Source of the DNA: Macrostomum lignano
Lineage: Eukaryota
Direction: 5' to 3'
Assembly (NCBI GenBank): GCA_002269645.1
Contig: NIVC01000023.1
Coordinates: forward strand, 1,178,001-1,242,000
DNA length: 64,000 nt
Part shown: positions 1-61,275 of the stretch, in pieces
Numbering within the stretch: the first letter of the stretch is position 1
Layout: each line of letters begins with the position of its first letter
Translations under genes and position numbers: made by a program
Notes under the pieces: generated by a model
Database searches by the model: none
What the model was told of the DNA's origin: nothing
The model's input: the letters and a program-made list of their open reading frames with translations, nothing else

Positions 1-37
1 CCCTATTAAGTAATACTATTGCTTTTAATTCTCATAG

Positions 38-3000
38 ATTCGTTCATCAGCAAGAGGAGTCTGCAAGTCTGCAAACCGGTAAACGCAGACCTTTGTCAGA
101 ATTTTTCATAGCTAGATTGAGTGTGTGTAAAGATTTTCCTTTTAAACTTTTCAAGCGACTAGCCGGTAGCGCGCCCCGGTTTTACTTTTGCTTTATACTT
201 GCATTGAAATTTTCAGTTACTTTGATTTCAACTTCGTTGCACTGTTGATCCATGTAGTATTATCGCGCATGCATTTCTAAATAAATATTAACGTAATGGA
301 CTCAAGGTAAGCCAAACCCAACCATTTCAGACATTCCGACCGGCGTTATTGCTTTTCATCGACGCGTTCGTGGCCGAAGTGTTGTCAGTCGAAGAGGCGA
401 AACGAGCCACATCCGGTCAGGCCTTCGATCCCAGAGCGGGCGATCTTTTCAACAAGCTGATCATGAACATCTTGTGAGTGACCTTCACTCTCTTCTTTGC
501 TCATGAGATGTTTTTGGCGCCGTCTACCTGTGCTTTGTAGCTTGAAGTTGAGGGTTCGAAACCTTAATTTTACGTTGCATCAAAAGCGGTCAACATCAAT
601 TCAGCGATCAAATCGCACGACTGCTGTACGAAAGGAAGCCGATATACTCAAACAGACCGTGTCCTTTCAAAAATTGGTCTCTACTTGATGGCTGTGTAAC
701 GACGCTTATTGAGCACACTAAGCCTTTATATTCAGGAAGCCAATATATCCACTAGATTCATAATTTGTAGGTAGTTATAGGTAATTGAAATCTGTTAACT
801 CGATCGGTAGCTAAGATAATCGTAATAAAATCCTCCATATTGATTCGCGTTTTTTCTAGCCAATCGCCCGGAAAGGCGATGCTCCGGCAGATACCAATGC
901 AGCTCAAGCTGCTCGAAATTCTGCTTCTAGCCGTTCGCAGCCTAAGCTTAACTATTCTCGTGAGCGGCTGGCGGTGCGACATGTTTAACTGGCCGGACCT
1001 GACTGACCAGCTACCTGCTGTCCTTGACGCAATGGTTCAGTGTGTGCGACAGCCAGTTATTACACTCGACACTTTGAACTATGGAAGCATGTTTCTTAGA
1101 ATACCGCTAGATTTCATCGACAATGTGGTGTAAGATTGGCGCATTCATGTTTTAAATTTTATTTCAGCCTAGTTGGCAAAAATTGGCATCTCTGGAAGTA
1201 GAAAACAGATTTACCGTATGGTCTGACCGCAAGTCACATAGAAAGGAAGTATGCACGACCTATGCTCTGCTGTAGTGCTGGACTTAGGCCTAACAAAGAA
1301 TTACTTGGAAGCTTCCAAGAGGTAATTTGATCAAGACGCTAATTTTCATTGACAGGAGGACCTCGCCAGAAACCATTTGCAATCTGCTTGAGAAATTTCG
1401 TCCACTTCTGGAAACCTGCCTTGAAAATGAATTGGCTACAGTCGACGTAACTGGCAGTGACACCTTGACTCTGGAAGGCCAAATACTGCACTCTGTTGTT
1501 GTTAGTCTAACCGCTGGATTCCAACAAGCTGCGAAGGTAAAAATAACTTCATTCAGCCCATGCTACGAAGCATTTTACTACAAAAGTTACGTTCGTAAAG
1601 CTAAAAAATTAGATTGAAAATTCGCACCTGCAGCTAGTGACAATCAACAAGGACCTATTTCCTCTGTACACCAAAGCCGTGGACAGGTTCTTCAGCAGCT
1701 CACGGGGCGACATGGCTACCGGAGTTTTGCTGGGGCTTAACAATTGCCTTGGCAACAGCTCAGATACCGTGTTTGCTTTTCTGCTGCATCTACCTCTTCT
1801 AGTGGATACGTATAAAAGAACGAAGAGAGAGCAACCGGAAATTTACACCGGCTTGGCACCTGGATTGATATGTAAAATTGAAATAGCATCTCTTTACAGA
1901 CACTGTGTAAAATATGAGTATTTCAGAGCATCTCTCCGTACATTCCAGACACTCTGCAAAGCAGTTCACGCAACGAGGTGCCAGACACATTGGCGCAACA
2001 AATTCCACAGCTTATTAGCCTTCAGGATGGCACTCTGAACATTGATACGCAACTGACATATTTGGTGGCACACGCTTGCAAGCACAACAGCAAGCACTGC
2101 CCCGATGAATTACGAGATTACATGCTCAAAATGCTCAAGAAGATAGGAGATCATCAATTTACAGCTCTAGAAGGACTTAGGTTTCTTGGTGAAGATCAGC
2201 GTATTGTGAAGGAAAGCTGCCTAGATACACTGGCAGAAGCGGCCAAGTCCAACATAGTCTCATCATTCCAGCGATGAATACCATTGAAAAGTGCAAATTC
2301 AGTACAGGCAAATTGATGACAGCCATAACTGACGTCGTAAATCATTATCTTGAAAAGGAGTCGGCGACTGAAAAGCTGGCCAGCTGCCTCGCGCTGATGC
2401 GACGTGTCGGAGTCGACAGTCCGCAGCTGCTGGCTGAGCGAGAGTCCGACATCAAGCGCTGGAAGTCAAGCCCGGCTCTGCTCGACGCCTGCAACCACCT
2501 GCTCGATGTGATCGCAAACCGCTCGCTCGTCGGTCTGGAAGGCCAAATCACCGACCAGAGCGACAAGATCGGCGGACTCGAGAGAGACTTGAGCGACACC
2601 GGACACAAAGTCGACGAGGTGTCGGGTCGCGTGGACGAGACCAGAGACGAGCTCGGACAAGTTCGGGGCAGAGTGGACGCGACGGAGGGCCGCGTGGACG
2701 AGCTGAATGTCGCTGTGGGCGTGCTGGGCGAGAAGGTCGAGGAGATCGATCTCAAGGTGAGTCGCTGAGAAGAAGCCTACAGCAGGCTCATATGGTTGAT
2801 AAAGAAGCCAACTCGCAGTTACAACTCCACTCCAGACTCTGAACGCGGCTCCTGCGTGGTCTCGCGAAGTGTCCCGACTGATGAACCCGGAGTCCGACAT
2901 TGACTGGCGACTGCTGGCTCAGAGACTGAACTTCTCGGCCGACGACATTCGAGCATGGGCCACAACTGCGGACCCGTGCATGAGTATGCTGGCCGAGTTC

Positions 3001-4551
3001 TACACAAACAACCGAGCAGCGGAAGCGTCCAAGGCTGTGCTGCAGCAGCTCAAGGAGATGAACCGTCTTGACGCAGCGGCCATTGTCGAGGCGTCCATTC
3101 TGAACGCAGGTGAGTACGAGCTATCTGAGCTTGATGCTCAGAGCTGAATCGAGACCACTCGTTGCTCAATTGAATATCTGAAATCGTATCGGAGCTAGCT
3201 GCTCGCCGTTTCCATTCAGAGTCCGCTGCCTCCGACGACCCGGTCGAGTTCACGGCGCCTCGCAACGTCTTCCTCAGCTATCAGTGGGGCCACCAGGCCG
3301 AGGTGAAGATGCTCAAGCAGCACCTGGAGAAGGCCGGGTATCGCTGCTGGATGGACATTGGCCAGATGGGAGGCGGAGACAAGCTGTTCTCGGCCATCGA
3401 TGCTGGAATTCGGTCAGCCAAGGTGGTCATTGCGTGCGTGACGGACAAGTACTCCAAGTCGGACAACTGCAGACGAGAGGTGAGCGTGTTTATCCTGAGT
3501 TCATCCTTGCAGTAGAGTAGCTACATATGTGCTCACACATACATGTGTCGCTCTCATCTCCAATTTGCAGCTGAACCTGTCCGTGTCGCTGAACAAGCAC
3601 CTGATCCCGGTGCAGCTCGAGCGAGTCTCTTGGCCTCTGGAAGGAGCCATGGAACCTCTGCTGACCGAGTACCTGTACATCCGCTTGTTCGATCGGAGCG
3701 GCAAGGCGTCCGGCTCCGGCGGAGTGTTCTGGCCGCCGGACAAGTTCATGGAGCTGCTGGTTCAGATCCGGTTGGCCGTGGCGCCCGACTACGACTCGGT
3801 GAGTGCAGAGTACGCGAACTGGTGGCAGCCGCCCAGCGCCGACGAGACCATCGTGCTGCCCGACCGGAAGGAGGCCTCCAAGACGGACGCCAAGACCAAG
3901 ACGAGCTCGGCCTCTGCCTCGGCCGACAAGTCTGACTCGGCCGACAGCCGCGACGCTCCGACAGCCGCTCCGCAGGTGTTCCTGTCCTACCAGTGGTCCA
4001 AGCAGTCAGAAGTGAAGGCGCTCTACTCTCGACTCTGCAGTCTCGGCTTCACCTGCTGGATGGACATCTTCCAGATGGGAGGCGGCGACTCGCTCTACGA
4101 GAAGATCGACCGCGGAGTTCGCGGCTGCAGCGTCGTTGTCGCCTTCGTCACTCCCAAGTACGCCGCCTCGCCCAACTGCAGGCGAGAGGTGAGCCTCGCC
4201 GACGCCATCCGCAAGCCGATCGTTCCGGTGATGCTGGAGAAGATGGCGTGGCCGCCCGAGGGTCCGATGTCGATGCCGCTCACGCAGCTCATCTACGTGC
4301 AGATGTACAAGGACGCGGACGACCAGCTGACGTGGCGCGGCGAAAAGTTCGAGGAGCTTCACGCCAGACTGCGGCAAATTGTGCCGGCGCCTGCGGCAGA
4401 GGCTGCAGCTGGTGGACAGGCGAAGAGCGGAACAGAAGCTGCAGAGGCTGGTGTGCCTGCGAGCCTGCCTTCAATGAGCGAGAAGAAGCGGGAGAAGCTG
4501 GCGAGGGTGCAGAGCGCCGCTGGTCGCTCGAAGACATGCGAAATTCTCTGA
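38..4551 (+). CDS. Multi-exon gene (5' incomplete): helical/ARM-like N-terminus, coiled coil, Death domain, two TIR_2-type domains, C-terminal CaaX (CEIL)
   Basis: Phase-consistent exons ~2272-2756 (coiled coil), 2836-3109 (Death-like: DWRLLAQRLNFSADDIRAW), 3220-3479 and 3571-4551 (VFLSYQW...WMDI.QMGGGD...NCRRE twice). Upstream exons (38-78, 331-473, ~605-750, ~861-1129, ~1169-1216, ~1276-1321, ~1355-1536, ~1634-1871, ~1949-2188) are approximate. Confidence 0.85.
2836..3109 (+). CDS. Death-domain exon of the TIR gene
   Basis: ccactccag acceptor, G|gtgagt donor; translation AWSREVSRLMNPESDIDWRLLAQRLNF...LQQLKEMNRLDAAAIVE has the death-fold pattern. Confidence 0.8.
3220..4551 (+). CDS. Tandem TIR exons (3220-3479, 3571-4551)
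   Basis: NVFLSYQWGHQ...SDNCRRE|LNLSVSLNKHLIPV and QVFLSYQWSKQ...SPNCRREVSLADAIRKPIVPV; GT-AG intron 3480-3570 in phase 0. Confidence 0.92.
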
Positions 4552-7369: not shown

Positions 7370-7762
7370 GAGTAATCGGCAGGTCTTTCGACTAAAAACT
7401 AGGGCTCCAGCAAGGGTTTCCCTCTTTTAGTCAGGGGCTTAAGCGACATTGTCACACAACCGGCGAGAGGCATTGCTGCCCATTCCGCCGACTCCCCTGA
7501 GCAGGCAAACAAGCGCGCGGATACGTACGCAGTCATACGCACAGGCACACACTCACACATAAGTGTACAGCGGCCCTAACTTTATTTATCGTTAGGCATG
7601 TACACTTCACTGCGCCTTGGGGGGTTGGTTCTCAAACTGGGCGTTAATTGCACGAGCAGAGCCAAGCCGAGATTCCAGTTTAGCCCCAAATTGATGTGAC
7701 TGCACTTGGAATCGAGCCTGGGCCGCTGGCACATCAGAGCGCCGCGCTGGACCACTGGGCCT
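7370..7762 (-). mobile_element. tRNA-derived SINE-like repeat
   Basis: Minus strand has A-box-like AGTGGTCCAGCG and B-box-like GGCTCGATTCC; body is shared with 13405-13730. Confidence 0.65.
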
Positions 7763-7949: not shown

Positions 7950-10900
7950 TCAAGACCAGACGTCCTCCTTGTACCGGCCTTCAATTCGCATCCGAGCCAG
8001 CAGGTGAGCGGCAGCCGATCCGCCGCCCGACTTTTTCGTCGACGAATCGTCGACTTTGTCGATACCAGGAGCTAGGGCGGCCTCCAGCGCAGCCAGGACG
8101 TCCTTAGCCATGCCAGTGGCATCGCCGCAAACCAATACGCAACAGGTGGATTTGTGCTCGCCTAGTAACAGGCGCCTAATCTCGGCAGCCTCCGTTGCTA
8201 TCCAATTAGTCACGTAGCCTCTGCATTGATCCGATGCCAGCTTAGGAAGCTGGGATTCGTCTAAACGAGAGAAAGCCAGTCGGATCTGCTGCACAGCGCC
8301 AGAATTTTGCAGCACTTCGATCGGTTCGCGGAAAGCGAAATCCCAATCGGGTCGGCGGCAGCCGTGAAGCAGCCAGGCTTCGCCGAGCTGCTGCTCTTTG
8401 GTGTCTCTGAAAAAATGTCAAAAGGTCATTAATTTTTTCTGGTCAATAATTTAAATAGACTAGGGGTCGGACAACTTTTTTTAACTCAAGGGCCGGATTA
8501 AGAATCCAGCTTATGGCTGCTGTTGAGATGAGAGTAGAAAGGAGAGGGAATAGATTATGAAAGACGAGAGAAGAGAGTGAGAGAGAAGAGAGAGAGGGGA
8601 TAGGGGAGAGAGGAGAGAGGAGACGGGAGAGAGGAGAGAAGGGAGAGGGGACAGGGGAGAGAGGAGAGAGGAGAGAGATGAGGGGGAGAGGGGAGAGAGG
8701 AGAGAAGGGAAAGGGGAGAGGAGAAAGGAGAGAGGAGAGGAGAGAGAGGAGAGAAGGGAGAGGGGGGAGAGGGGAGAGGAGAGAGGAGAGGAGAGGGGAG
8801 AGAGGAGAGAAGGGAAAGAGGAGAGGAGAGAAGGGAAAGAGGAGAGGAGAGAGGAGAGGAGAGAGGGGAGAGAGGAGAGAGGGGAGAGGGGAGAGAGTGG
8901 AGAGAGGAGAGAATGGAGAGGGGAGAGAGGAAAGAGAAGAGAGGGAGAGGGGAGAGGGGAGAGAGGAGAGGGGAGAGAGGAGAGGGGAGAGAGGATGGGA
9001 CAGGAGAGAGAGGAGAGAGTCTACGGAAAAGGTTTCTCAGGATTTTTTGATTTTGTTGTAAGCTGTAAAGTGTCTGTTATTAAAGTTGTAAATTTGCTGA
9101 CTTCCAAGACTTGGCGAACAACTGTTTATCTTTAGGTCCAGCTCACCCATTCTCAAGCAGCCGCTGTCGTCTCCAGTCCAGAAAAGCGCAGAGAGGCGCG
9201 CACCCAGTGCCCGGCCCGATCAGCAGCAGCGGCCCGTCGGTCATCTGCGATTCTGTCAGCCGAAAATTGCGATTCTCTCTGCCGTAGACTGGAATGCGAG
9301 CGCCCGGCGATAGGCGTCTCAGCCAGCCTGTGGCCACGCCTTCACGACTAGCTGTGCGACCCGACTCAGCAGGGATGTATACCTCGCTAAAGTACAGTTT
9401 GACGGAGCTAGGCGAACCGTAGTTGGCTAGGGAGTACGGCCGGGCCTGCAGTCTGGAGTGTTCGAGCGGCAGTTTGTGACCCGCCGATTCTGGGACGGGT
9501 TTTTGGCCGATTCTGGGACGGGTTTTTGATCGATTTTGGGACGGGTTTTTTGGCCGATTCTGGGACGGGTTTTTGGCCGATTCTGGGACGGGTTTTTGGC
9601 CGATTCTGGGACGGGTTTTTGGCCGATTCTGGGACGGGTTTTTGGCCGATTCTGGGACGGGTTTTTGGCCGATTCTGGGACGGGTTTTTGGCCGATTCTG
9701 GGACGGGTTTTTGACCGATTCTGGGACGGGTTTTTTGGCCGATTCTGGGACGGGTTTTATGGCCGATTCTGAGACAGGTTTTTTGTTTGATCTGGCTTGT
9801 GTCTGATTCTAGGACGGATTTGTGGGGGATTCTTGGACAGGTTCGTGTCCGATTTTTTCGTCCTAGATTTGAAGAGGGTATTGCTGATACATTCGGAGCG
9901 ATTTTTCCATGACTGTGATGTTTTTACTAATGAATTTTAAAATTCGAATAGTAGGCTGTTTTCACTTGTGAACTTCAGGTGTTTTTTTAATCAAGAATCG
10001 GAAATCATTTATTATACAAATGAGAAACAAAGGAAAGCTCATAAATATCAGGTTGCATTCCATTAAACAGGCCTCACCTAGGCAGGTAGGGCAGCAGGTG
10101 ATCCAGCGGCGGCCGGCAGGACGGGAAATGACGCAGCAGATCCAGTAGGGACAGCCGGGGCCCCAGCAACAGGCGAGTCTTGGCTTCGCTGGTTTGCCTG
10201 AGTTAATAAAAGTTCCAGGTGAGCGCAGGTGCTGACATCAGGGGAGATTCTCAATGTGAATCAGGAGGATTCTCAATGTGAATCAGGGGGATTCTCAATG
10301 TAATCAGGGGGATTCTCAATGTGAATCAGGGGGATTCTCAATGTGAATCAGTGGCGATTGTCAATCAATGTGAATCAGTGCCGATTGTCAATCAATGTGA
10401 ATCAGTGCCGATTGTCAATCAATGTGAATCAGTGCCGATTGTCAATCAATGTGAATCAGTGCCGATTGTCAATCAATGTGAATCAGTGAGGATTCTCAAT
10501 GTGAATCAGTGACGATTCTCAATGTGAATCAGGGGGATTCTCAATGTGAATCAGGGGGATTCTCAATGTGAATCAGGGGGATTCTCAATGTGAATCAGTG
10601 ACGATTCTCAATGTGAATCAGGGGGATTCTCAATGTGAATCAGTGGCGATTGTCAATCAATGTGAATCAGTGGCGATTCTAAATGTGAATCAGTGCCGAT
10701 TGTCAATCAATGTGAATCAGTGGCGATTGTCAATCAATGTGAATCAGTGCCGATTCTCAATGTGAATCAGTGCCGATTGTCAATCAATGTGAATCAGTGA
10801 CGATTCTCAATGTGAATCAGTGGCGATTGTCAATCAATGTGAATCAGTGCCGATTGTCAATCAATGTGAATCAGTGCCGATTGTCAATCAATGTGAATCA

Positions 10901-13900
10901 GTGCCGATCGTCAATCAATGTGAATCAGTGACGATTCTCAATGTGAATCAGTGGCGATTGTCAATCAATGTGAATCAGTGGCGATTGTCAATCAATGTGA
11001 ATCAGTGCCGATTGTCAATCAATGTGAATCAGTGCCGATTGTCAATCAATGTGAATCAGTGCCGATTGTCAATCAATGTGAATCAGTGCCGATTGTCAAT
11101 CAATGTGAATCAGTGAGGATTCTCAATGTGAATCAGTGACGATTCTCAATGTGAATCAGGGGGATTCTCAATGTGAATCAGTGGCGATTGTCAATCAATG
11201 TGAATCAGTGGCGATTGTCAATCAATGTGAATCAGTGCCGATTCTCAATGTGAATCAGTGCCGATTGTCAATCAATGTGAATCAGTGACGATTCTCAATG
11301 TGAATCAGTGGCGATTGTCAATCAATGTGAATCAGTGCCGATTGTCAATCAATGTGAATCAGTGACGATTCTCAATGTGAATCAGTGGCGATTGTCAATC
11401 AATGTGAATCAGTGGCGATTGTCAATCAATGTGAATCAGTGCCGATTGTCAATCAATGTGAATCAGTGCCGATTGTCAATCAATGTGAATCAGTGCCGAT
11501 TGTCAATCAATGTGAATCAGTGCCGATTGTCAATCAATGTGAATCAGTGAGGATTCTCAATGTGAATCAGTGACGATTCTCAATGTGAATCAGTGACGAT
11601 TCTCAATGTGAATCAGTGACGATTCTCAATGTGAATCAGTGACGATTGTCAATCAATGTGAATCAGTGGCGATTGTCAATCAATGTGAATCAGTGCCGAT
11701 TCTCAATGTGAATCAGTGCCGATTGTCAATCAATGTGAATCAGTGACGATTCTCAATGTGAATCAGTGGCGATTGTCAATCAATGTGAATCAGTGCCGAT
11801 TGTCAATCAATGTGAATCAGTGCCGATTGTCAATCAATGTGAATCAGTGCCGATTGTCAATCAATGTGAATCAGTGCCGATTGTCAATCAATGTGAATCA
11901 GTGCCGATTGTCAATCAATGTGAATCAGTGCCGATTGTCAATCAATGTGAATCAGTGCCGATTGTCAATCAATGTGAATCAGTGCCGATTGTCAATCAAT
12001 GTGAATCAGTGCCGATTGTCAATCAATGTGAATCAGTGCCGATTGTCAATCAATGTGAATCAGTGCCGATTGTCAATCAATGTGAATCAGTGCCGATTGT
12101 CAATCAATGTGAATCAGTGCCGATTGTCAATCAATGTGAATCGGTGCCGATTCTCAATATGAATCAGTGCCGATTGTCAATCAATGTGAATCGGTGCCGA
12201 TTCTCAATATGAATCAGTGCCGATTGTCAATCAATGTGAATCAGTGCCGATTGTCAATCAATGTGAATCAGTGCCGACTCTCTGTACTTGATTAACTAAT
12301 AGAATAATGGATTCCATGCATAACTATCACATTGTCACCTGGCGCAAAGCTGCCGCAGCCGCAGGCGCTCCCGACGGTTCCCAGCATACTCTGCCAGCAC
12401 CCGGCGCAGTAGATTGCTCGGTGGCTGTCGAATATCAACGTAGCGCAGCAGCAGGCTGGCCAGAGTCACCGGCCTGTCCGCAGGCGGCAGATGGTCCGGC
12501 GCCTTCTTGCCGCCGCTGCAAACCAGTCGAACAACCCGACGGCCGTCGACGCCGAGACGGTGCAGCAGATCGTCGACCTCTTGGGGACAGTTGGCCGGGC
12601 AGAGCGAGATGGCATCGCCAGGCGCCAGACTGTGCGCCCAGGCTCCGGCGCCAGACACATCAAGACTAACGCGCCAGATTCGTTTTGGCGCCGCAGACGA
12701 AGATAACTCGTCTAGCGCTAATAGAGGCGCTAAATATGTGGCGCCGCCTCCGCCGATGGCGCCGGGCGGTCGACCGAAAGCGCCGCCAGCGCCGCCGTCA
12801 CCGCACAACTCCGAATCGGCAGCATCGGCAGCGTCAGCAGTTACGGAAGCGGCTCCATCGTCAGCCGGATGATCAACCAGGCTGAGGTAGCGAGCCGGCA
12901 GCGGTGGGACAGCCAGGCTGGCCTCGTCTGGCCACGCAACACCCTCGAGATCATCGCCGAAAACCTATAGGAACGCGAGCAGAGCAGAGGAAATCTTTGT
13001 GTCGGAATAATGGCTTGATAATAAGCTCAGTTGGTACGGGTGGGGCTGCGGGGAAAAGCGTCTTCGCTCGCGCATCACCACCCACTTGGTTTGAATCCGC
13101 GGCCATATTAATTTGGGGCTTGTGTGCTCGAAAATTGACCGTGGAGGTTGTCGTGCGGTCATGCAGGCCCACCCTTCAAGGCATATAGAGATGTACATGC
13201 CTGACGATTGGGAAGTTTTAAGGGCTGCTGTACACCCTGTGTGAGTGCGTGCCTGCGAACAGTATTGGCGCTTGTGTGCCCAGGAGTCAGCGCAATGGGC
13301 AGAGTTGACTCATGCAAAGGGTGCACACAGACCTCCTGCAAGTATACTCTACAGCCAGTTTGCTCCAAATGACCCTCGTTAGGAGTCGCATTCTTAAACG
13401 AGCACAATACATTGATTGGTTTCTGTACTTCGCTGAGCCAGGACGATAAGCCGTTCTTATTAGAGACAGGGGGCTGCGTGGATTCTGGCCCACTTCAAGC
13501 GACATTGGCACACAAGCGCTCGGATACGTACGCAGGCACACACACAGGCACACACTCACACAGGAGTGTACACCGGCCCTAACTTAATTTATCGTTAGGC
13601 ATGTACACTTCACTGCGCCTTGGGGGTTGGCCAAGCCGAGATTCCAATTTAGCCTAAAATTAATGTGACTGCACTTGGATTCGAGCCTGGACCGCTGGCA
13701 CACCAGAGCGCCGCGCTGGACTACCAGGCTACGGAACAACCTGACAAAATTTCGTAGACAAACACTTATTTAAAGTTCTATTTAACACACTTCACAAGAC
13801 TCGATTCACATTCTTACCATGCTACTCTTCAGTAGGCGATCTCTTCCTAGACACAGAATAATAAAAACTCAAATCGGAGTTCTTGACGCTAAAAGTATTT

Positions 13901-14686
13901 TCAGGGAAGGATTTCGAAGGAATAGACACATCGGGAAGTGACTGCAACCCTGGAAATGCACTTAGACAGACGATCACACGGAATGTTACAGCAGACCTGA
14001 CTTTCTCATGGCCCTAATGTCAAGAAGCCCTACATACTCATAGGCCGATGTTCGTGCATAAGACGAAAAAAATTGTAAGCAGCACTCACTGGGCCATCGT
14101 CGGAGTTATCGCAGCCAATGTCCGCATTGATATCAAGGGCACCAGATCCAGCACCTGTCAGACTAATACCAGCCATATTATCAACAATCTTAGCGTCGTC
14201 TTTAACATCAGAAGCGGCATCGGCGGCAATCAAAGCATCCACAGCTGGCCAGAGTCGCTCTAGAAACGGTCCAACAGTGAGTTCCAAGCCGACTGCATCG
14301 TCAGCCAAAGCGGTTGGCAGAAACAGTTCGGCGCCCAACGATTTAAGCTTAGTCTCAATGGTTTGCGGGCATTTGCCAAAGCTAGTGTAGTTGGTATCGC
14401 CCAGGCCTAGCAAAGAGAATCGAATATGGCTGTAGGCATCGGCTGGCAGATCCGACCGGCTCAGCAGGCGGACAAATTTAGCCGCATTATCCGGTGCGTC
14501 CCCATCGCCAGTGGATGAACACACTATGATAAGCCGACGGACCGTTGCTAGGTCTAACTGTTCGTTGCAGGTGCGCAGTTCAACGCGAATCTTCGGTCGA
14601 GTCTGCAACTCCGAAGCGATGTCCTCTGCGATGGCCTGCGCTTGGCCAGTCTGACTGCCGTAGAGAATGTGCCAGGTGGCCGGCAT
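7950..14686 (-). CDS. MTRR: Methionine synthase reductase; exons 14686-14090, 12964-12339, 10197-10078, 9452-9147, 8406-7950 (2106 nt, 701 aa)
   Basis: Flavodoxin motifs (ILYGSQTGQAQAIAE, TGDGDAPD, GLGDTNY, ADDAVGLELTV), FAD/NADPH motifs (RPYSLA, IGPGTG, HGCRRPDWDF), C-terminus RYKEDVWS. All four introns are GT-AG and phase-consistent. Confidence 0.95.
8540..9018. repeat. Polypurine (GGAGA/GA)n low-complexity tract in MTRR intron 4
   Basis: Almost pure G/A sequence. Confidence 0.95.
9482..9790. repeat. ~23-bp minisatellite (GGCCGATTCTGGGACGGGTTTTT) in MTRR intron 3
   Basis: About 13 tandem units. Confidence 0.95.
10240..12280. repeat. 27/23-bp minisatellite array (CAATGTGAATCAGTGCCGATTGTCAAT / CAATGTGAATCAGTGACGATTCT) in MTRR intron 2
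   Basis: About 2 kb of two interleaved unit types. Confidence 0.97.
13030..13400 (+). mobile_element. tRNA-derived SINE-like repeat (second subfamily) in MTRR intron 1
   Basis: GTGGGGCTGCGG then GGTTTGAATCC B-box-like motif; aligns by eye with 49435-49740. Confidence 0.55.
13405..13730 (-). mobile_element. tRNA-derived SINE-like repeat in MTRR intron 1
   Basis: Minus strand TGGTAGTCCAGCG and GGCTCGAATCC; shares GTACATGCCTAACGATAAA core with 7370-7762. Confidence 0.65.
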
Positions 14687-14760
14687 GACTTGTTTCAGTA
14701 TGCGATAATTTCGCTTCCTTAGCATCAATGGCGTCAGGGTCTGCTTTCTGTACTGTGTGG

Positions 14761-15183
14761 GACTGACTGACTGACTGACTGACTGACTGACTGACTGGCT
14801 GACTGACTGACTGTGTGACTGACTGACTGGCTGACTGACTGACTGGCTGACTGACTGACTGACTGACTGACTGACTGGCTGACTGACTGGCTGACTGACT
14901 GACTGCACTGAAGGGCTGACTGACTGTGTGACTGACAAGGGCTGACTGACTAACTGACTGACTGACTGACTGACTGACTGACTGACTGACTGACTAACTG
15001 ACTGACTGACTGACTGGCTGACTGACTGACTGACTGACTGACTGACTAACTGACTGACTGACTGACTGACTGACTGGCTGGCTGACTGACTGACTGACTG
15101 ACTGACTGACTGATTGACTGACTGACTGACTGACTAACTGACTGACTGACTGACTGACTAACTGACTGACAAGGGCTGACTAA
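14761..15183. repeat. (GACT)n tetranucleotide microsatellite upstream of the MTRR start
   Basis: About 100 units. Confidence 0.97.
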
Positions 15184-29815: not shown

Positions 29816-32113
29816 ATGGTAGAGTCTGAAAATGAAAGCGAGCCTTCTCTCTCAACTGACTATTCGGCGCACTTATGCGAGTCCATTAGTTCGCCTTCTG
29901 ATATTTCATCATTGAGCAATATCAGTGCGAATGCAAATGCACCTAGCATTGAAATCGATCTGAAGCGGACTAGCACTGCTGCTACTGCTTGCTCTGATGA
30001 TTTAGTGCCAGATGATGAGGACATTAAAAATCTGTCTAGTCTATCAACCATTTCTGATCCTGATGTACAAGCCGCTCTAATCTACCAATGGGCCATTACA
30101 TCGGGGGTTTCTGAGGCAGCTCTCGATAGGCTATTAAAGCTTGCTTCTGTTCTTCTTCGGGGTGCAGGGCCCCACACATTTCCAACCAGCGCTAAAGTGC
30201 TTAAGTCGAGACTAAACAATGTTTGTTCTATTAATGACAGCTGTGTTTCCGAGATTTCTGTTTGCAGTGAATGCAAAGGCAAATGTGATGTTCATCCTCT
30301 AAAGGCAAAAGCTACCGTGACTCTTCTAGACATTGTTCCTCAGCTCCGGGTCATCTTGACTAGGTACATTGGAACAATTCTCCAGTATGAGCAGGAGTTA
30401 CGAATGAGTAGAAACAGTGATGTCCTGAATTCCGAAATTGTGAACAAGCAAAATTTAAAGCTATCCTCAGGCAAAGAACTCCACTTGCATCTTCTCATAT
30501 CTGCTGATGGTGCCAACTTTTTCGAAAGCATTCAGAGCAGTTTTTGGCCATTTCAAGCCCAAATTCTGAATCTCCCAGGGCATATTCGTCAACGCTTTGC
30601 CAATCTAATTCTCATAGCCCTTGTTTCCTCCAGGGCCGTTCCTAACTTTCAATATTTTTTGTCCGATTTAATGAATCGCTTGCCGAAGCAGTTTGATTTT
30701 TTGGACTATTGTGTGTACGTCCATTGCACACTATTTGTGTGTGATTTACCAGCTCTTGCTAAGCTCTTTTGCATTCGTCAGTTCAATGGGGCATTTAGTT
30801 GTCCGAAGTGTCTCCATCCTGGCGAGAGTATAAAAGTGTCTCAAAAGGGATCAAATTGGGTTTTCCGATTTGACAAGAACCACATTTTTCCTCTGCGAAC
30901 AGCAGCTACTCACAATGAGCATTGTCAACTTGCTAACATTCGCAACAAGCCTGTTTTCGGTGTAAAAGCACGCAGTTGTTTGTTGAACTACATTTCTTTT
31001 CCGAACTGCTATGCCATCGACAGCTTACATTGCTTTTTTGAAGGTCATATAAAATACCTTTTAGAAGAATTGACATCCTCGGCGAATAGACATGAGCAAT
31101 ATTTTTGCTCAACAAGTTGTCTGGCATTTGTCGCAGCTTGTATACGCAATTCTGTCATCCCATCCAGTGTTTTCGTTAATTCCAATTTTGGAAGCTTTTC
31201 GGATTGGAAGGCCAAGCATTTTAAAAGTTTTGCTTTGTATTTTCTTTTTCCTACCTTAGTGCAGCGAGTAACGCATTTGCCTCTGAAGCTGCTACTTACT
31301 AATTTGGTGCTTCTTTATCACATGCTATATAACCCACGGTCGAATAAGTCCGACATTGAAAAATTGGCTGAGTCGTTTGTTGGCAATGCTCAGAAAGTCT
31401 TCGGTCCGAGAATTTTGCGTCTAAACTTTCACTTGCTTTTGCACATTGCTGATCAGTATGAATTGCTTGGTCCTGTGTCTTTTTATTCCATGTTTGCTTT
31501 TGAAAGCGCAATTGGAATGTTTAAGAAATTTTTGTGTGGAACTTCATCGTTTGGCTCCCAGCTAGTATTGAAGTTTTTGTGGCAAAAGGAGCTATTTCAT
31601 TATTTTAGTCAAGCCCAGGATCCTGCGGTTCTAGAAGCCTTCAATTCCATATCTTTGGAGCCAATGCGATCAGAGGGCATTCTTCGAAGCTCTGAAGCCT
31701 ATGTCCATGGATATTTGTTTTCCAGTGTACTCTCTGCTGGCAAATCTACCAGCTCAAATCATCTTTGCATTTTGAAGTCTGGCGAAATTTGCTCAATCCT
31801 TGAATTTAAATTACCGAATCATGTGCGCGTTCAAATTCTGGAACCAATCGTCTCGCTTTTTGACTACATTTCTTCTAGCACATCATGGCCTGAGGATTTA
31901 GTAGAGTGGCAACAGATGCTTAGCGCAATGTTTAAGAGGTGCTCGTCATTTAATTATGTTCTAGTTATTTTGTCGACTGCACAGCGATTGTCCCCGGAAA
32001 AGTTTGTCAATCTGGCGGATATCGACCGTCCTTGCATTGCTGTTCCCGTAGCGTCCTATAGTAAGGATTGCTTTTGTGCTATTCCCCTGTGCAAATCATT
32101 TGAGCATGATTAG
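29816..32113 (+). CDS. EnSpm/CMC-type DDE transposase (765 aa, intronless)
   Basis: LISADGANFF..SSFWP..ILNLP..R, CDLPA, FNGAFSCPKC, IDSLHCFFEG, NFHLLLH, SMFAFES motifs. Confidence 0.93.
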   Translation: MVESENESEPSLSTDYSAHLCESISSPSDISSLSNISANANAPSIEIDLKRTSTAATACSDDLVPDDEDIKNLSSLSTISDPDVQAALIYQWAITSGVSEAALDRLLKLASVLLRGAGPHTFPTSAKVLKSRLNNVCSINDSCVSEISVCSECKGKCDVHPLKAKATVTLLDIVPQLRVILTRYIGTILQYEQELRMSRNSDVLNSEIVNKQNLKLSSGKELHLHLLISADGANFFESIQSSFWPFQAQILNLPGHIRQRFANLILIALVSSRAVPNFQYFLSDLMNRLPKQFDFLDYCVYVHCTLFVCDLPALAKLFCIRQFNGAFSCPKCLHPGESIKVSQKGSNWVFRFDKNHIFPLRTAATHNEHCQLANIRNKPVFGVKARSCLLNYISFPNCYAIDSLHCFFEGHIKYLLEELTSSANRHEQYFCSTSCLAFVAACIRNSVIPSSVFVNSNFGSFSDWKAKHFKSFALYFLFPTLVQRVTHLPLKLLLTNLVLLYHMLYNPRSNKSDIEKLAESFVGNAQKVFGPRILRLNFHLLLHIADQYELLGPVSFYSMFAFESAIGMFKKFLCGTSSFGSQLVLKFLWQKELFHYFSQAQDPAVLEAFNSISLEPMRSEGILRSSEAYVHGYLFSSVLSAGKSTSSNHLCILKSGEICSILEFKLPNHVRVQILEPIVSLFDYISSSTSWPEDLVEWQQMLSAMFKRCSSFNYVLVILSTAQRLSPEKFVNLADIDRPCIAVPVASYSKDCFCAIPLCKSFEHD

Positions 32114-43430: not shown

Positions 43431-44811
43431 TCGATTACTGACACCGCAGCTGACGACGTGCTTGCATTTGAATTCCCAGCGTCGATGCAGCCGCATATCG
43501 ACCGGATGCGTCGAGTTGTTATCCGCTGTGGAGCGCAACGGGTACTTATATATACAAATGTATATTAACGGGTATGATTTGACTTTTTAATAGTTCGTAC
43601 TTGAAGAACACATTAATACACTTTCCATTTTAGTACGTCGGCCTGTTGAACATTTGTAACGAATTCCTATGAAAGATGGAAAGCTTACGGGAAACTCCAT
43701 GAAAAATACGGGAATCTGCTGCAACCCCAAGTAACCGAGGATATTTTATGGTTAAATAATTATTTAGGATATGCTGCAAGTAATTTTAGGTTGTTGTTTA
43801 AGTTAATCGTTGTCGATTACGTTAAGATTCAATGCTGCTGAAAATTTCAATTTACTAGATCAAACTTTTGTTCTCAAACTTTCAAGCAAATTAACTACTA
43901 CTTAAATTTGTTCCAAAATTTTTAATCGAATAAAACTAAACTAACCCAACTAACTAAACTATACTAACTAACTAAATTCACCCGCAAAAATACAATTGTA
44001 ACATTATGCCACATGCTAAAAGTAATAATTAAAAGCGAGTCTCTGAAATAAAAAGTGATAAGTTTGCCCGCAATAACTTCAACATGTCCATGGTCGGATG
44101 CTTTTCTTACTTGTTCTGTATATCAGCATACTTTTGAGTACAAAATGGACGTCGGTTTTATTTGATTGTTAATTTAGGCCTTAAAAATCCAATGGAAGAT
44201 TGCGTCTAATCCAAAGAGAACTGTACAGTCTCCCCCCGAAGGGGGGGCAAATTCGCTAGTATATAACTAAATCTGAAAAGTTTCTATATATGTATGTATA
44301 TATGCACATAATCCATTTTAAAAGAATTTATCCAACCGATTTTTTTCAAACTTGCACCATTCGATCAGAAATTCTTGCGAATCGGTACAGTTCTCTTGGC
44401 TAAGAGATTGCTTCATTTTAAAGGGCTCAAATATTAGAAAAACTGTACTTTCCCTATCTAATTAGTGTATTTTTCTTGCAGTGAGAGCTCAATATGTCTA
44501 CAGCCATAGACTAAACTTCAGTTCTTGAGTTGATGCTGTGAGCTATACATAGCTATACTTGAAGCTTATTATATTTTACAATAATAAATAATATCCTCAT
44601 CTTCAACTTGAATTGTTTGAAACCGGAACTGCAATTGTCTGAAGGCTTAGTGGGGAAATTCCAGAGATGTAAAGTAAAGATGTAATGTAAAGAGATATCC
44701 ATTCTCACTGGGCGAAATTGCTGAGATATCAAGGCTCACCGGGGGGAATTGCTGAGATATCAAGGCTCACTATTGGTGGATAATCATTGATGGAATTGCT
44801 GCGATACATAA

Positions 44812-46036
44812 CAGTCTAATGGGTGCTGTTGTAAACTGTCTAATTGGTGCTGTTGTAACTGTCTAACGGATGCTGTTGTAACTGTCTAATTGGTGCTGTT
44901 GTAACTGTCTAACGGATGCTGTTGTAAACTGTCTAATGGGTGCTGTTGTAAACTGTCTAACGGGTGCTGTTGTAAACTGTCTAACGGATGCTGTTGTAAA
45001 CTGTCTAATGGGTGCTGTTGTAAACTGTCTAACGGGTGCTGTTGTAAACTGTCTAACGGGTGCTGTTGTAAACTGTTTAACGGGTGCTGTTGTAAACTGT
45101 TTAACGGGTGCTATTGTAACTGTCTAACGGGTGCTGTTGTAACTGTCTAACGGGTGCTGTTGTAAACTGTCTAACGGGTGCTACATGTATTGTAAACTGT
45201 CTAACGAATGCTGTTGTAAACTGTCTAATGGGTGCTGTTGTAAACTGTCTAACGGGTGCTGTTGTAAACTGTCTAACGGGTGCTGTTGTAAACTGTTTAA
45301 CGGGTGCTGTTGTAAACTGTTTAACGGGTGCTGTTGTAAACTGTTTAACGGGTGCTGTTGTAAACTGTTTAACGGGTGCTGTTGTAAACTGTCTAACGGG
45401 TGCTGTTGTAAACTGTCTAACGGGTGCTGTTGTAAACTGTTTAACGGGTGCTGTTGTAAACTGTTTAACGGGTGCTGTTGTAAACTGTTTAACGGGTGCT
45501 ATTGTAAACTGTATAATGGGTGCTGTTGTAAACTGTCTAACGGGTGCTGTTGTAAACTGTCTAACGGGTGCTGTTGTAAACTGTTTAACGGGTGCTGTTG
45601 TAAACTGTTTAACGGGTGCTATTGTAAACTGTCTAACGGGTGCTGTTGTAAACTGTCTAACGGGTGCTGTTGTAAACTGTTTAACGGGTGCTATTGTAAA
45701 CTGTTTAACGGGTGCTGTTGTAAACTGTTTAACGGGTGCTATTGTAAACTGTTTAACGGGTGCTGTTGTAAACTGTTTAACGGGTGCTGTTGTAAACTGT
45801 TTAACGGGTGCTATTGTAAACTGTATAATGGGTGCTATTGTAAACTGTTTAACGGGTGCTGTTGTAAACTGTATAATGGGTGCTATTGTAAACTGTATAA
45901 TGGGTGCTATTGTAAACTGTATAATGGGTGCTGTTGTAAACTGTATAACGGGTGCTGTTGTAAACTGTATAATGGGTGCTATTGTAAACTGTATAATGGG
46001 TGCTGTTGTAAACTGTCTAACGGGTGCTGTTGTAAG
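44812..46036. repeat. 24-bp minisatellite (GGGTGCTGTTGTAAACTGTCTAAC) inside the Helitron
   Basis: About 50 units. Confidence 0.96.
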
Positions 46037-46749
46037 CTGAAAAGAAAAGTGCTTGCTCGAAAAAATGTTTGGGATACGCAAAGCAGGTCAGCCTGGTACT
46101 CTATATAACTAAATCTGAAAAGTTTCTGTTTGTATGTATGTAAATAATCCATTTTAAAAAATTTTAAATTTTTATGTCCCGCAAAGCGGGTCTAATTGCT
46201 AGTATTACCTAATTGAATAAGCTGCTGTGGCTGCAGCAGCAGCTAGTGTTTATGGCCCTAACCCTTGGGTTTTCGGGGCCTCGGGGACGTCCGCTAAATA
46301 CATAGCGAATGCCGGAGTCACCCATCAGTCATCACGGTAATATAGAATCTGTGATATGAACAGTGACAACGTTAACCATACATAGCGATATCATAGATCC
46401 GATGATATGGTTAATGAAATGATATACATATTTGGAATATGCTTAATTTTTAGTAGTTTTAGAATGACCACAGCTGCATACATGATACCTCGATCGTGCC
46501 AATCCCATGCTTTTGTCTTATTAATTCCACGTCAGCTTTATTTACTTTGAATTTTAGAGCAACCCTTTACCCTATATCTGTGCTGTGTAAAAAAGTATTG
46601 AAAATTTAATATAAAAATGCAAAGCATCGCATGTTTACCGTTGGAATTCTTTTCAACAAAAAACGTTTACCGGTAGTCTGTAAACGTGAGCTGCTATACA
46701 ATCTAAGATCCACATTTTCTGTAATTTACATTTTATTTGAATTATCAAT

Positions 46750-47300
46750 ACTTATACAATTCACTCATTTTGGAGCCGCAGGCACTCATTTTAGCGTCAC
46801 AGGCACTCATTTTAGCTCTGCAGGCACTCATTTTGGAGCCACAGGCACTCATTTTAGCACAACAGGCACTCATTTTAGCGCCACAGGCACTCATTTTAGC
46901 GCCACAGGCACTCATTTTAGCGCCGCAGGCACTCATTTTAGCGCCACAGGCACTCATTTTAGCGCCACAGGCACTCATTTTAGCGCCACAGGCACTCATT
47001 TTAGCGCCACAGGCACTCATTTTAGCTCCGCAAGCACTCATTTTAGTGCCGCAGGCTCTCATTTTGGAGCCACAGGTACTCATTTTAGCGCCACAGGCAC
47101 TTATTTTAGCGCCACAGGCACTCATTTTAGCGCCGCAGGCACTCATTTTAGCGCCACAGGCACTCATTTTAGCGCCACAGGCACTCATTTTAGCTCCGCA
47201 GGCACTCATTTTAGTGCCGCAGGCTCTCATTTTGGAGCCACAGGCACTCATTTTAACGCCGCAGGCACTCATTTTAGCGCCGCAGGTACTCATTTTAGCA
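46750..47300. repeat. 21-bp minisatellite (GCACTCATTTTAGCGCCACAG), remnant of the hAT MITE without termini
   Basis: Same unit as 53515-54730. Confidence 0.92.
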
Positions 47301-52319: not shown

Positions 52320-52460
52320 AAGCCACCACAAATTCTATATTGCCTAGATGAGCCACACCCGCCACACATTCTATATTGCCTAGATGAGCCACACCCGCCA
52401 CACATTCTATATTGCCTAGATGAGCCACACCCGCCACACATTCTATTTTGCCTGGATGGG
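52320..52460. repeat. 36-bp VNTR (GATGAGCCACACCCGCCACACATTCTATATTGCCTA), ~4 units
   Basis: Paralogous to 42855-42910 and 60920-61275. Confidence 0.9.
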
Positions 52461-60919: not shown

Positions 60920-61275
60920 CCAAACCACCACAAATTCTATATTGCCTAGATGAGCCACACCCGCCACACATTCTATATTGCCTAGATGAGCCACACCCGC
61001 CACACATTCTATATTGCCTAGATGAGCCACACCCGCCACAGATTCTATATTGCCTAGATGAGCCACACCCGCCACAAATTCTATATTGCCTAGATGAGCC
61101 ACACCCGCCACAAATTCTATATTGCCTAGATGAGCCACACCCGCCACAAATTCTATATTGCCTAGATGAGCCACACCCGCCACAAATTCTATATTGCCTA
61201 GATGAGCCACACCCGCCACACATTCTATATTGCCTAGATGAGCCACACCCGCCACACATTCTATTTTGCCTAGAT
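60920..61275. repeat. 36-bp VNTR, ~10 units
   Basis: Same unit as 52320-52460. Confidence 0.93.

What the first reader, a model, noticed from the sequence alone, without database searches (positions are those of the whole stretch)
38..4551. SARM1-like logic in a different chassis: helical repeats, coiled coil, Death domain and two TIRs that both keep the catalytic-position Glu
Seen: a Death-like exon followed by two TIR_2-type domains ending SDNCRRE and SPNCRRE. Established: the alphaC Glu (SARM1 E642, plant SxWCxxE) is the catalytic residue of TIR NADases, and activity needs TIR clustering. Inference: the N-terminal helical region may autoinhibit and the coiled coil/Death domain may oligomerise, giving an invertebrate cell-death or immune NADase. 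ARM/DEATH/TIR combinations have been catalogued in invertebrates, so the architecture may not be new, but its function is unlikely to be characterised.
Basis: partly seen in the sequence, partly recalled or inferred. Interest (0 to 1): 0.7.

Follow-up and report, generated by a model that had tools for sequence, protein, structure and literature searches.

The report
Flatworm ARM–Death–double-TIR gene copy
This is the 3' two-thirds of a Macrostomum flatworm gene from a conserved but functionally unstudied invertebrate family (helical solenoid, coiled coil, Death domain, two TIR domains, lipid-anchor tail); it resembles the axon-death enzyme SARM1 in layout, its chemistry is unproven, and this copy carries a frameshift.

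Summary
Window 38-4551 (+) splices into a 1036-codon reading frame with ten GT-AG exons. It encodes an ARM/HEAT-like helical region, a coiled coil, a Death domain and two TIR_2 domains carrying SDNCRRE and SPNCRRE. The gene is cut at its 5' end by the window edge; about 480 residues are missing.

It is not a new architecture. It belongs to "ecTIR-DC family 6", catalogued in invertebrates, with 1350-1600 aa orthologues in molluscs and rotifers. All are uncharacterised.

Both Glu residues align with SARM1 E642. That Glu is kept by more than 70% of all TIRs, including non-enzymatic TLRs. The partner Trp of the WxxxE motif is Asn in both TIRs, family-wide.

- A conserved C-terminal CaaX prenylation box, CEIL here, present in 82 of 86 relatives.
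- The family persists in Macrostomum and bdelloid rotifers, which lack TLRs. This argues against a plain TLR-adaptor role.
- This copy has a 1-nt frameshift at about 2257, or an 83-nt rescue intron, plus substitutions at invariant TIR1 positions.
- The 3' half (2381-4551) is a GC-rich tract 93% identical to a paralogue whose 5' half is only 26-44% identical.

The parts
38..78 (+). First exon visible in the window (phase-2 acceptor). The gene continues upstream of the window.
   Evidence: ag|AT..CCG|gtaaac. Its translation RSLQVCKP aligns with the paralogue P0001 (KLIQLNAAK).
331..2188 (+). Exons 331-473, 860-1129, 1356-1536, 1634-1871 and 1949-2188: the ARM/HEAT-like helical region (aa 14-370).
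   Evidence: GT-AG borders. Identity to M. lignano P0001 is 26-44%, with the same intron positions. The family profile hits CAND1, importin beta-3 and AP-3 delta. The AF2 model of the paralogue's equivalent region is all-alpha and matches beta-catenin, designed ARM proteins and transportins.
2189..2271 (+). Segment that is either an 83-nt rescue intron (GTGAAG...CAG) or exon sequence carrying a 1-nt deletion at 2256/2257. Read through, the frame stops at TGA 2275-2277.
   Evidence: The paralogue aligns in frame A to 2256 and in frame B from 2259. The nucleotide alignment shows a single-base gap. In the paralogue gene the region is one exon, L001 16130-16972.
2272..2507 (+). Last helical repeats. 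The recombination or conversion breakpoint lies at about 2381.
   Evidence: Nucleotide identity to L001 jumps from about 57% to 97-100% between 2351-2380 and 2381-2410. GC rises from 0.45 to 0.6 at the same point.
2508..2756 (+). Coiled coil (aa 450-532).
   Evidence: Weak Pfam coiled-coil hits (DUF7310, Laminin_II). The family profile matches trimeric coiled coils: P22 gp26 at 2.8e-6, reovirus sigma-1 and Lpp.
2875..3093 (+). Death domain (aa 546-618), within exon 2836-3109.
   Evidence: PF00531 at 27.9 bits, above its cut-off. Nearest solved relative is the p75NTR death domain. The AF2 model shows a six-helix bundle with pLDDT about 95.
3255..3780 (+). TIR domain 1 (aa 636-780), split by intron 3480-3570. 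Holds QMGGGD 3363-3380, SDNCRRE 3459-3479 and Glu710 at 3477-3479. Copy-specific changes: P733L at 3637-3639 and G738E at 3652-3654.
   Evidence: PF13676. hhalign to the SARM1 TIR gives probability 96% with Glu aligned to E642. P733 and G738 are P in 18/18 and G in 17/18 of the relatives compared.
3976..4395 (+). TIR domain 2 (aa 846-985). Holds QMGGGD 4072-4089, SPNCRRE 4168-4188 and Glu916 at 4186-4188.
   Evidence: PF13676, profile positions 1-115 of 122. hhalign to the SARM1 TIR gives probability 90%. phmmer aligns SPNCRRE with SDWCWDE of Cat1.
4396..4536 (+). Low-complexity, basic C-terminal tail.
   Evidence: The equivalent inter-TIR linker has pLDDT below 50 in the model. The tail varies in length and repeat number between paralogues.
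4537..4551 (+). CaaX box CEIL plus stop codon: predicted geranylgeranylation site.
   Evidence: 82 of 86 family proteins with complete tails end in Cxxx. The last residue is L in 35, M in 27 and I in 13.

Best explanation
**What it is.** The locus is a paralogous copy of the Macrostomum member of ecTIR-DC family 6. It is cut by the window edge and may be damaged.

**Family architecture.** About 900 aa of ARM/HEAT solenoid, a coiled coil, a Death domain, TIR, TIR, a disordered basic tail, and a CaaX box.

**Most likely mechanism for the family protein.** It is a lipid-anchored, constitutively oligomeric signalling switch that acts without Toll-like receptors.
- The prenylated tail holds it on a membrane.
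- The coiled coil pre-assembles it, probably as a trimer.
- The ARM/HEAT region keeps the Death-TIR-TIR module off until a cue is sensed.
- Release lets the two TIRs pack head-to-tail with neighbours, forming composite pockets around the invariant Glu.

**Committed reading of the output.** The pockets hydrolyse NAD+ or a related nucleotide to non-cyclic products, because the cyclisation-linked aromatic is missing. The Death domain recruits further partners.

**Shown versus inferred.**
- Shown: architecture, family membership, Glu alignment, loss of the Trp, CaaX conservation, and presence of the family in Macrostomum and Rotaria, lineages a published survey reports as TLR-less.
- Inferred: prenylation, autoinhibition, oligomeric state and all catalysis.

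**Probabilities.** Membership in the family: 0.95. NAD+-consuming activity: about 0.4.
For: - The Death-TIR-TIR module is 45-56% identical to proteins of molluscs, annelids, rotifers, amphioxus, hemichordates and echinoderms.
- Full-length orthologues of 1350-1600 aa share the whole layout.
- The literature describes ecTIR-DC family 6 as ARM-like plus Death plus two TIRs (PMC6836662).
- Glu is invariant in both TIRs and aligns with SARM1 E642.
- All 25 invariant TIR2 residues lie in betaA/AA loop, betaB/BB loop/alphaB, alphaC and the betaD region. The first three are the elements that build the NADase pocket in SARM1 and AbTir.
- The best structural neighbours are enzymatic TIRs: SARM1, SPARTA, AbTir, Cat1.
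- PADLOC defence-TIR models score 1e-8 to 1e-9 per domain. The animal-type PF01582 model scores 5e-7 for the whole protein.
- CaaX is present in 82 of 86 relatives.
- M. lignano and bdelloid rotifers have no TLRs (PMC8609888) yet keep the family.
- The 3' tract has dN/dS 0.13 against the paralogue.
Against: - The WxxxE Trp is replaced by Asn in both TIRs family-wide. W-to-A mutants of SARM1, L6, ROQ1 and AbTir lose or reduce activity.
- The Glu is also conserved in non-enzymatic TLR TIRs.
- Foldseek scores for Hydra TRR-2 and TLR15 TIRs (TM 0.68-0.75) are as good as those for SARM1, so fold does not discriminate.
- Death plus TIR is the signature of the adaptor MyD88.
- No activity, localisation or expression data exist for any member.
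- In this copy the frameshift would stop translation before the coiled coil. Two invariant TIR1 residues are also changed.
Confidence: 0.4

Rival explanations
1. Non-enzymatic, MyD88-like scaffold. The TIRs only make TIR-TIR contacts with other TIR proteins at the membrane. The Death domain nucleates a Myddosome-like complex with death-domain kinases or caspases. The conserved Glu and loops serve packing, not catalysis.
For: - Death followed by TIR is the MyD88 order.
- The authors of PMC6836662 propose TLR signal transduction from gill co-expression with TLRs.
- The Aplysia survey files such proteins as MyD88-like with an Armadillo-type fold.
- The Trp of WxxxE is absent.
- The Glu is also kept by non-enzymatic TLR1/2/6/10.
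- A C-terminal membrane-targeting element after the TIR is also a feature of arthropod MyD88 (PMC7075850).
Against: - The family is retained at 45-50% identity in M. lignano and bdelloid rotifers, which lack TLRs.
- The TIRs are of the TIR_2, bacterial-defence type rather than the TLR/MyD88 type.
- The MyD88 Box 2 motif is replaced by an invariant QMGGGD loop.
- Invariant residues concentrate on the pocket elements.
Confidence: 0.35
2. Whatever the family does, this particular copy is a recently inactivated paralogue, a pseudogene or a decaying duplicate. This question is independent of the mechanism question.
For: - A 1-nt deletion at 2256/2257 lies inside what is a single exon in the paralogue, with a stop at 2275-2277.
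- Three of the four copy-specific substitutions in folded domains hit conserved sites: S535N, P733L (P in 18/18 relatives) and G738E (G in 17/18). Paralogue-specific changes fall at variable sites.
- No protein identical to this gene's product was returned from the 5.8-billion-protein collection.
Against: - About 370 codons over six exons upstream of the deletion, and about 660 codons downstream of it, are otherwise open.
- A plausible 83-nt GTGAAG...CAG intron, within the size range of this gene's other introns (77-386 nt), restores the frame.
- dN/dS of the 3' tract is 0.13.
- A single-base indel could be an assembly error.
- The protein searches scored only 8000 word-sharing candidates, so absence from the results is weak evidence.
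Confidence: 0.4
3. The mosaic (diverged 5' half, near-identical 3' half) and the frameshift are artefacts of assembling a repeat-rich, partly duplicated genome.
For: - The window is full of minisatellites.
- M. lignano carries many recent duplicates (general knowledge).
- Single-base indels are a known error type of long-read assemblies.
Against: - The 3' tract is 93% identical to L001, not 100%, with introns at 87% and exons at 96-99%, so it is a separate locus.
- There is no high-identity stretch upstream of the breakpoint at which an assembler could have switched copies.
- The reading frame and intron positions are kept across the junction.
- The same GC step exists in the paralogue.
Confidence: 0.1

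Closest known systems
ecTIR-DC family 6 (Gerdol et al. 2017 classification; described in Loripes orbiculatus, Mytilisepta virgata; Aplysia 'MyD88-like with Armadillo-type fold')
   Same: Long N-terminal ARM-like region, central Death domain and two C-terminal TIRs. The named hits are invertebrates only. The Death-TIR-TIR module is 45-56% identical.
   Different: Nothing in architecture; this is a member. New here:
- a flatworm representative;
- the conserved CaaX tail and the NxxxE motif, neither mentioned in the passages I could read;
- the chimeric, GC-rich 3' tract and the damage in this copy.
SARM1 / C. elegans TIR-1
   Same: An N-terminal ARM-type solenoid, then an oligomerisation module, then a C-terminal TIR with the alphaC Glu. 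The TIR fold is the top Foldseek match (TM 0.68-0.77). A WPxP-type motif after betaD is shared.
   Different: - No SAM domains; a coiled coil plus Death domain instead.
- Two TIRs, not one.
- Trp638 equivalent is Asn.
- A CaaX tail, which the SARM1 TIR lacks (its aligned region ends without one).
- TIR sequence relationship is remote (20-28% identity in the hhalign matches). [quoted passage not shown]
MyD88 (including arthropod MyD88 with a C-terminal membrane-localisation domain)
   Same: A Death domain directly upstream of the TIR, and a membrane-targeting element at the C-terminus.
   Different: - About 900 aa of ARM/HEAT plus a coiled coil in front.
- Tandem TIRs of TIR_2 type with QMGGGD in place of Box 2.
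- The Death domain is nearest to p75NTR, not MyD88.
- The family is present in TLR-less animals.
Bacterial defence TIRs (SPARTA TIR-APAZ, AbTir, ThsB, Cat1, TIR-SAVED)
   Same: These are the best sequence-level and good structure-level matches for both TIRs, and the Glu aligns.
   Different: The bacterial enzymes that make cyclic ADPR have an aromatic residue four positions before the Glu; this family has Asn. The domain context is eukaryotic.
Oyster TIR-STING
   Same: An invertebrate cytosolic TIR protein. [quoted passage not shown]
   Different: Its sensor is a STING domain, and it has no Death domain, ARM region or CaaX. I did not compare the sequences directly.

Membership tests
ecTIR-DC family 6 | Long N-terminal region with ARM-like repeats | tested here: met
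   The visible 440 aa are 26-44% identical to the paralogue's solenoid. The family profile hits CAND1, importin beta-3 and AP-3 delta. The AF2 model matches beta-catenin and transportin. The first ~480 aa lie outside the window.
ecTIR-DC family 6 | Central Death domain | tested here: met
   PF00531 at 27.9 bits against a cut-off of 22.6. Six-helix bundle in the model.
ecTIR-DC family 6 | Two C-terminal TIR domains | tested here: met
   PF13676 in two stretches, E 6e-47. Two TIR folds with pLDDT above 90.
ecTIR-DC family 6 | Sequence orthology with catalogued invertebrate members and no vertebrate members | tested here: met
   45-56% identity over 451 aa to mollusc, annelid, rotifer, amphioxus, hemichordate and echinoderm proteins. 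No vertebrate name appears among the hits. Many hits are unnamed, so absence from vertebrates is not proven.
SARM1 family | Tandem SAM domains forming the octamer ring | tested here: not met
   No SAM hit in Pfam. A coiled coil and a Death domain occupy that position.
SARM1 family | TIR with the WxxxE motif (W638, E642) | tested here: not met
   The Glu aligns with E642. The motif reads N-C-R-R-E, and hhalign places a gap or Asn opposite W638.
SARM1 family | ARM domain with an allosteric NMN/NAD+ pocket | not testable with these tools
   Only a general ARM/HEAT fold is supported. SARM1 ARM was not among the listed matches.
Catalytic (NADase) TIR domains | Glutamate on helix alphaC in a pocket formed by betaA, the AA and BB loops, alphaB and alphaC | tested here: met
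   E710 and E916 lie on the alphaC helices of the model. They are invariant in the family and align with SARM1 E642 and the Cat1 DE. Pocket geometry could not be inspected because model coordinates are not returned.
Catalytic (NADase) TIR domains | Aromatic residue four positions before the Glu (required for cyclase products; important in SARM1, L6 and ROQ1) | tested here: not met
   Asn706 and Asn912. Asn is invariant or nearly so across the family. Role of the aromatic.
Catalytic (NADase) TIR domains | Measured NAD+ cleavage that depends on the Glu | not testable with these tools
   Needs biochemistry.
MyD88-type adaptors | Death domain followed by a single TLR/IL-1R-type TIR with Box 1-3 motifs, working downstream of TLR/IL-1R | tested here: not met
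   - Two TIRs of TIR_2 type; PF01582 matches only weakly.
- The BB loop is QMGGGD.
- The host lineage has no TLRs.
CaaX-prenylated proteins | C-terminal Cys-aliphatic-aliphatic-X, conserved in orthologues | tested here: met
   CEIL at the C-terminus. 82 of 86 relatives end in Cxxx, with L, M or I last. Actual lipidation was not tested.

The most novel reading that the evidence does not exclude
**Family.** ecTIR-DC family 6 may be a second animal TIR death or immune switch, independent of SARM1. It would be membrane-anchored by prenylation and gated by an ARM/HEAT sensor. Its NxxxE active site would make a product, or use a substrate, different from WxxxE TIRs. It would supply TIR signalling in animals that have lost all TLRs.

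**Macrostomum.** The effector half (coiled coil-Death-TIR-TIR) may behave as a GC-rich cassette, homogenised by gene conversion between paralogues whose sensor halves have diverged to 26-44% identity. That would be an NLR-like division into a variable sensor and a shared effector.
Probability: 0.15. Interest if true: 0.75.

Novelty: new member of a known kind. Interest (0 to 1): 0.45.

Why it matters
SARM1 and oyster TIR-STING are the only animal TIRs named as NADases in the papers I read. A 2026 atlas stresses that several animal TIR clades remain unstudied (PMC13142454).

This family is old and strongly conserved. About 50% identity links flatworm and amphioxus over 450 residues, and the pocket-forming residues are invariant. 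It survives in lineages without TLRs.

If its TIRs are enzymes with an NxxxE site, that widens the chemistry and the cell biology (membrane-tethered, Death-domain-coupled) of TIR signalling in animals. If they are not, the family shows that an invariant "catalytic" Glu can be kept for structural reasons.

M. lignano is a laboratory model with RNAi, so the question is testable. The window copy itself adds mainly an example of chimeric or concerted evolution and possible decay.

Tried and rejected
- **Whole-protein search.** The word-indexed protein search with the whole model returned only the two M. lignano paralogues. The same search with an N-terminal profile did too. Only 8000 word-sharing candidates are scored, so neither said anything about the N-terminus elsewhere.
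- **Structure prediction of the window's own N-terminus.** I modelled the paralogue's equivalent region instead. Its first 230 residues are low-confidence.
- **Start codon at 296.** An ATG at 296-306 followed by gtaagc was considered as a start exon. I rejected it because the intron would be 24 nt and no downstream acceptor keeps the frame.
- **Donor at 2180/2181.** Rejected because it gives a stop.
- **Tandem copies.** I looked for them in the window and in L001 and found none.
- **Short single-TIR+CaaX relatives.** I tried to identify their organisms. The record carries no name.
- **Fold search as a discriminator.** TLR-type TIRs score as well as SARM1, so it did not separate enzyme from adaptor.
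- **Orthologue with a fast-evolving N-terminus.** Rejected because dS is 0.06 after the breakpoint and saturated (1.9) before it.


Full report
**1. What is in the sequence**

Window 1-4551 carries a multi-exon eukaryotic gene on the + strand. Ten exons with GT-AG borders join into one frame of 1036 codons ending at TGA 4549-4551. The exons are 38-78, 331-473, 860-1129, 1356-1536, 1634-1871, 1949-2188, 2272-2756, 2836-3109, 3220-3479 and 3571-4551.

Position 38 is a phase-2 acceptor preceded by a pyrimidine tract, so the gene begins upstream of the window.

Pfam finds the following:
- a Death domain at aa 546-618, above its curated cut-off;
- two TIR_2 domains, E 6e-47;
- weak coiled-coil matches over aa 454-547;
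- nothing in the first 440 residues.

SDNCRRE is nt 3459-3479, the last codons of exon 9. SPNCRRE is nt 4168-4188.

AlphaFold2, run on an alignment of 46 relatives, gives a six-helix Death bundle and two TIR folds with domain pLDDT above 90.

**2. Whose gene it is**

The closest proteins are two Macrostomum lignano entries, P0001 (1518 aa, partial) and P0002 (1401 aa). They carry about 480 more N-terminal residues than the window can show.

Identity along the protein is sharply bimodal. It is 26-44% over aa 1-400 and 96-100% from about aa 405 to the folded end.

At DNA level, window 2310-4462 is 92.9% identical to the P0001 locus (L001), introns included. Identity jumps from about 57% to 97-100% between 2351-2380 and 2381-2410, in the middle of an exon.

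| Region | dS | dN | dN/dS |
|---|---|---|---|
| After the breakpoint | 0.06 | 0.008 | 0.13 |
| Before the breakpoint | 1.9 (saturated) | 0.37 | 0.20 |

After the breakpoint the introns are about 87% identical.

A 30-fold difference in synonymous divergence cannot come from selection on the protein. The two halves therefore have different ages. The likely cause is non-allelic gene conversion or recombination between old paralogues.

In both loci GC rises from about 0.44 to about 0.6 at the breakpoint. It falls back at the stop codon. This fits GC-biased conversion of a shared 3' cassette.

An assembly chimera is unlikely. The tract is 93% identical, not 100%. There is also no identical stretch upstream at which an assembler could have switched copies.

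**3. Damage in this copy**

In the P0001 gene, residues 692-972 are one exon. That exon corresponds to window 1949-2756.

The paralogue aligns to the window in one frame up to 2256 and in another frame from 2259. The nucleotide alignment shows a single-base gap after AACAT. Read through, the frame stops at 2275-2277.

My open model depends on removing 2189-2271 as an 83-nt GTGAAG...CAG intron. Its size fits this gene's other introns, but it deletes 28 codons that are homologous to coding sequence in the paralogue.

Downstream, three of the four copy-specific substitutions in folded domains hit conserved positions:
- S535N;
- P733L (P in 18/18 relatives);
- G738E (G in 17/18 relatives).

The last two lie in the TIR1 motif WPPxGxxGP. 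The paralogue's own changes fall at variable sites.

This copy may be recently inactivated, rescued by intronisation, or affected by an assembly indel. I cannot tell which without reads.

**4. The family**

The Death-TIR-TIR module alone finds 202 proteins at E<=1e-10. Identity is 45-56% over the full 451 residues. Named sources include:
- bivalves and gastropods;
- Capitella;
- bdelloid rotifers;
- Branchiostoma;
- hemichordates and echinoderms;
- a bryozoan.

An exhaustive profile search finds full-length orthologues of 1350-1600 aa. In these the shared 720 positions start at residue about 650-750. They come from Rotaria, Haliotis, Patella, Mytilus, Mizuhopecten, Dreissena and Nucella, and all are named "uncharacterized".

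The long N-terminal region is therefore ancestral, not a flatworm addition.

A profile of 15 full-length members matches HEAT/ARM proteins: CAND1 at 2e-6, importin beta-3 at 5e-5 and AP-3 delta at 5e-5. Its coiled-coil part matches trimeric coiled coils such as P22 gp26, reovirus sigma-1 and Lpp. Its Death part matches the p75NTR death domain.

An AF2 model of the paralogue's solenoid is all-alpha. It matches designed ARM proteins, beta-catenin and transportins. Its C-terminal half is confident and its N-terminal half is not.

The literature already names this architecture. [quoted passage not shown] TIR domains" is assigned to "ecTIR-DC family 6 ... reported only in other invertebrates". It is enriched in gills (PMC6836662). 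Family 6 is also gill-enriched in Mytilisepta (PMC5549309). Aplysia surveys list "MyD88-like" proteins with an Armadillo-type fold (PMC9334734).

I found no functional study.

**5.

The protein ends in CEIL. Of 86 family proteins with two SxNCxxE motifs and a complete tail, 82 end in Cxxx. The last residue is L (35), M (27) or I (13), usually after KSKS or a similar stretch.

This is a conserved CaaX box. It predicts prenylation and membrane attachment, which is an inference from the motif.

A shorter sister group has one TIR2-like domain, a long basic tail and a CaaX box. It shares 60-67% identity with TIR2.

**6. Is it a SARM1-like NADase?**

For:
- Both Glu residues are invariant and lie on helix alphaC.
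- They align with SARM1 E642 in profile-sequence alignments against a SARM1 TIR sequence verified against PDB chains.
- phmmer aligns SPNCRRE with SDWCWDE of the CRISPR-associated TIR enzyme Cat1.
- The best Foldseek hits are SARM1, SPARTA TIR-APAZ, AbTir, Cat1 and RPP1.
- Bacterial defence-TIR models match each domain at 1e-8 to 1e-9.
- All 25 invariant TIR2 residues lie in betaA/AA loop (SYQW), betaB/BB loop/alphaB (WxDIxQMGGGD, KID), alphaC (YxxSxNCxxE) and the betaD region. The first three of these, with alphaC carrying the Glu, are the elements said to form the NADase pocket.

Against:
- The Glu is conserved in more than 70% of all TIRs and in more than 90% of TLR1/2/6/10. [quoted passage not shown]
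- In the WxxxE motif the Trp stacks on the substrate.
  - W638A lowers SARM1 activity.
  - L6 W131A and ROQ1 W82A lose NADase activity.
  - AbTir W204A loses most cyclisation.
  - All cyclase TIRs carry an aromatic at this position (10.1101/2022.05.07.491051).
- Here the position is Asn in both TIRs throughout the family.
- TLR-type TIRs (Hydra TRR-2, TLR15) score as well as SARM1 in the fold search.

My reading: if the TIRs are enzymes, they are hydrolases rather than cyclases, or they act on another substrate. I give catalysis about 0.4.

**7. Adaptor or autonomous switch?**

Death plus TIR suggests a MyD88-like adaptor, and the clam authors proposed exactly that.

However, the M. lignano genome has no TLRs, and nor do the bdelloid and most other rotifers surveyed (PMC8609888). 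The family is nonetheless retained in Macrostomum and Rotaria at 45-50% identity.

The protein therefore does not need canonical TLRs. TLR-like TIR proteins do persist in these lineages, so an adaptor role is weakened but not excluded.

The layout is a regulatory solenoid, a constitutive oligomeriser, assembly and effector domains, and a membrane anchor. It is that of a self-contained switch, analogous to SARM1 but not homologous in its oligomeriser and only remotely in its TIR. [quoted passage not shown]

**8. Verdict**

The gene is a new flatworm member of a known, catalogued, functionally unstudied family. "SARM1-like logic" is a fair analogy for the layout. The evidence offered for catalysis, retention of the Glu, is weak on its own and is offset by the missing Trp.

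The additions worth keeping are:
- the conserved CaaX tail;
- the NxxxE motif;
- persistence of the family in TLR-less animals;
- the GC-rich converted 3' cassette;
- the signs of damage in this copy.

Interest is moderate.

Noticed in passing
window 2381-4551, and L001 16500-18868: There is a sharp compositional step. GC is 0.57-0.67 in the shared 3' tract and 0.38-0.47 in the 5' half and flanks, in both paralogues. The step starts at the conversion breakpoint and ends at the stop codon. It may reflect GC-biased gene conversion of an effector cassette.
   Followed up: partly
window 4396-4536 vs P0001 C-terminal tail: The tail repeat AEAAAGGQxKSG is present about once in the window gene and about six times in P0001. 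This is a copy-number difference in the disordered tail.
   Followed up: no
P0077-P0122; locus L002 3001-4308: A short sister family has a single TIR2-like domain (60-67% identical), a long Lys/Ser/Thr-rich tail and a CaaX box. One example (L002) has no intron. Most records come from unnamed ENA assemblies.
   Followed up: partly
window 7445-7760 and 13508-13737: A ~320-bp element is 92% identical to sequence just 3' of the P0001 gene (L001 20095-20412). A second copy at 79% identity lies in the window. It is either a dispersed repeat or a remnant of synteny.
   Followed up: no
window 10338-12277; 44810-46039; 46762-47299, 53520-54733, 63411-64000; 52326-52458, 60928-61276: The window holds large minisatellites: a 27-bp unit x75, a 24-bp unit x51, a 21-bp unit in three arrays and a 36-bp unit in two arrays. 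The paired arrays, 8.6-9.9 kb apart, suggest a segmental repeat.
   Followed up: no
window 29816-32113 (+): A 765-aa ATG-started ORF has DUF1258 (6e-13) and DUF4218 (2e-5) domains and sits in an AT-rich stretch. It is probably a transposon-derived gene.
   Followed up: partly
window 14030-14938 (-): An ORF contains a flavodoxin domain (PF00258, 1.5e-24). It is presumably an exon of a flavoprotein gene on the opposite strand.
   Followed up: no
window 8525-9019: A GA-rich, purine-strand low-complexity tract with GC skew +0.35.
   Followed up: no
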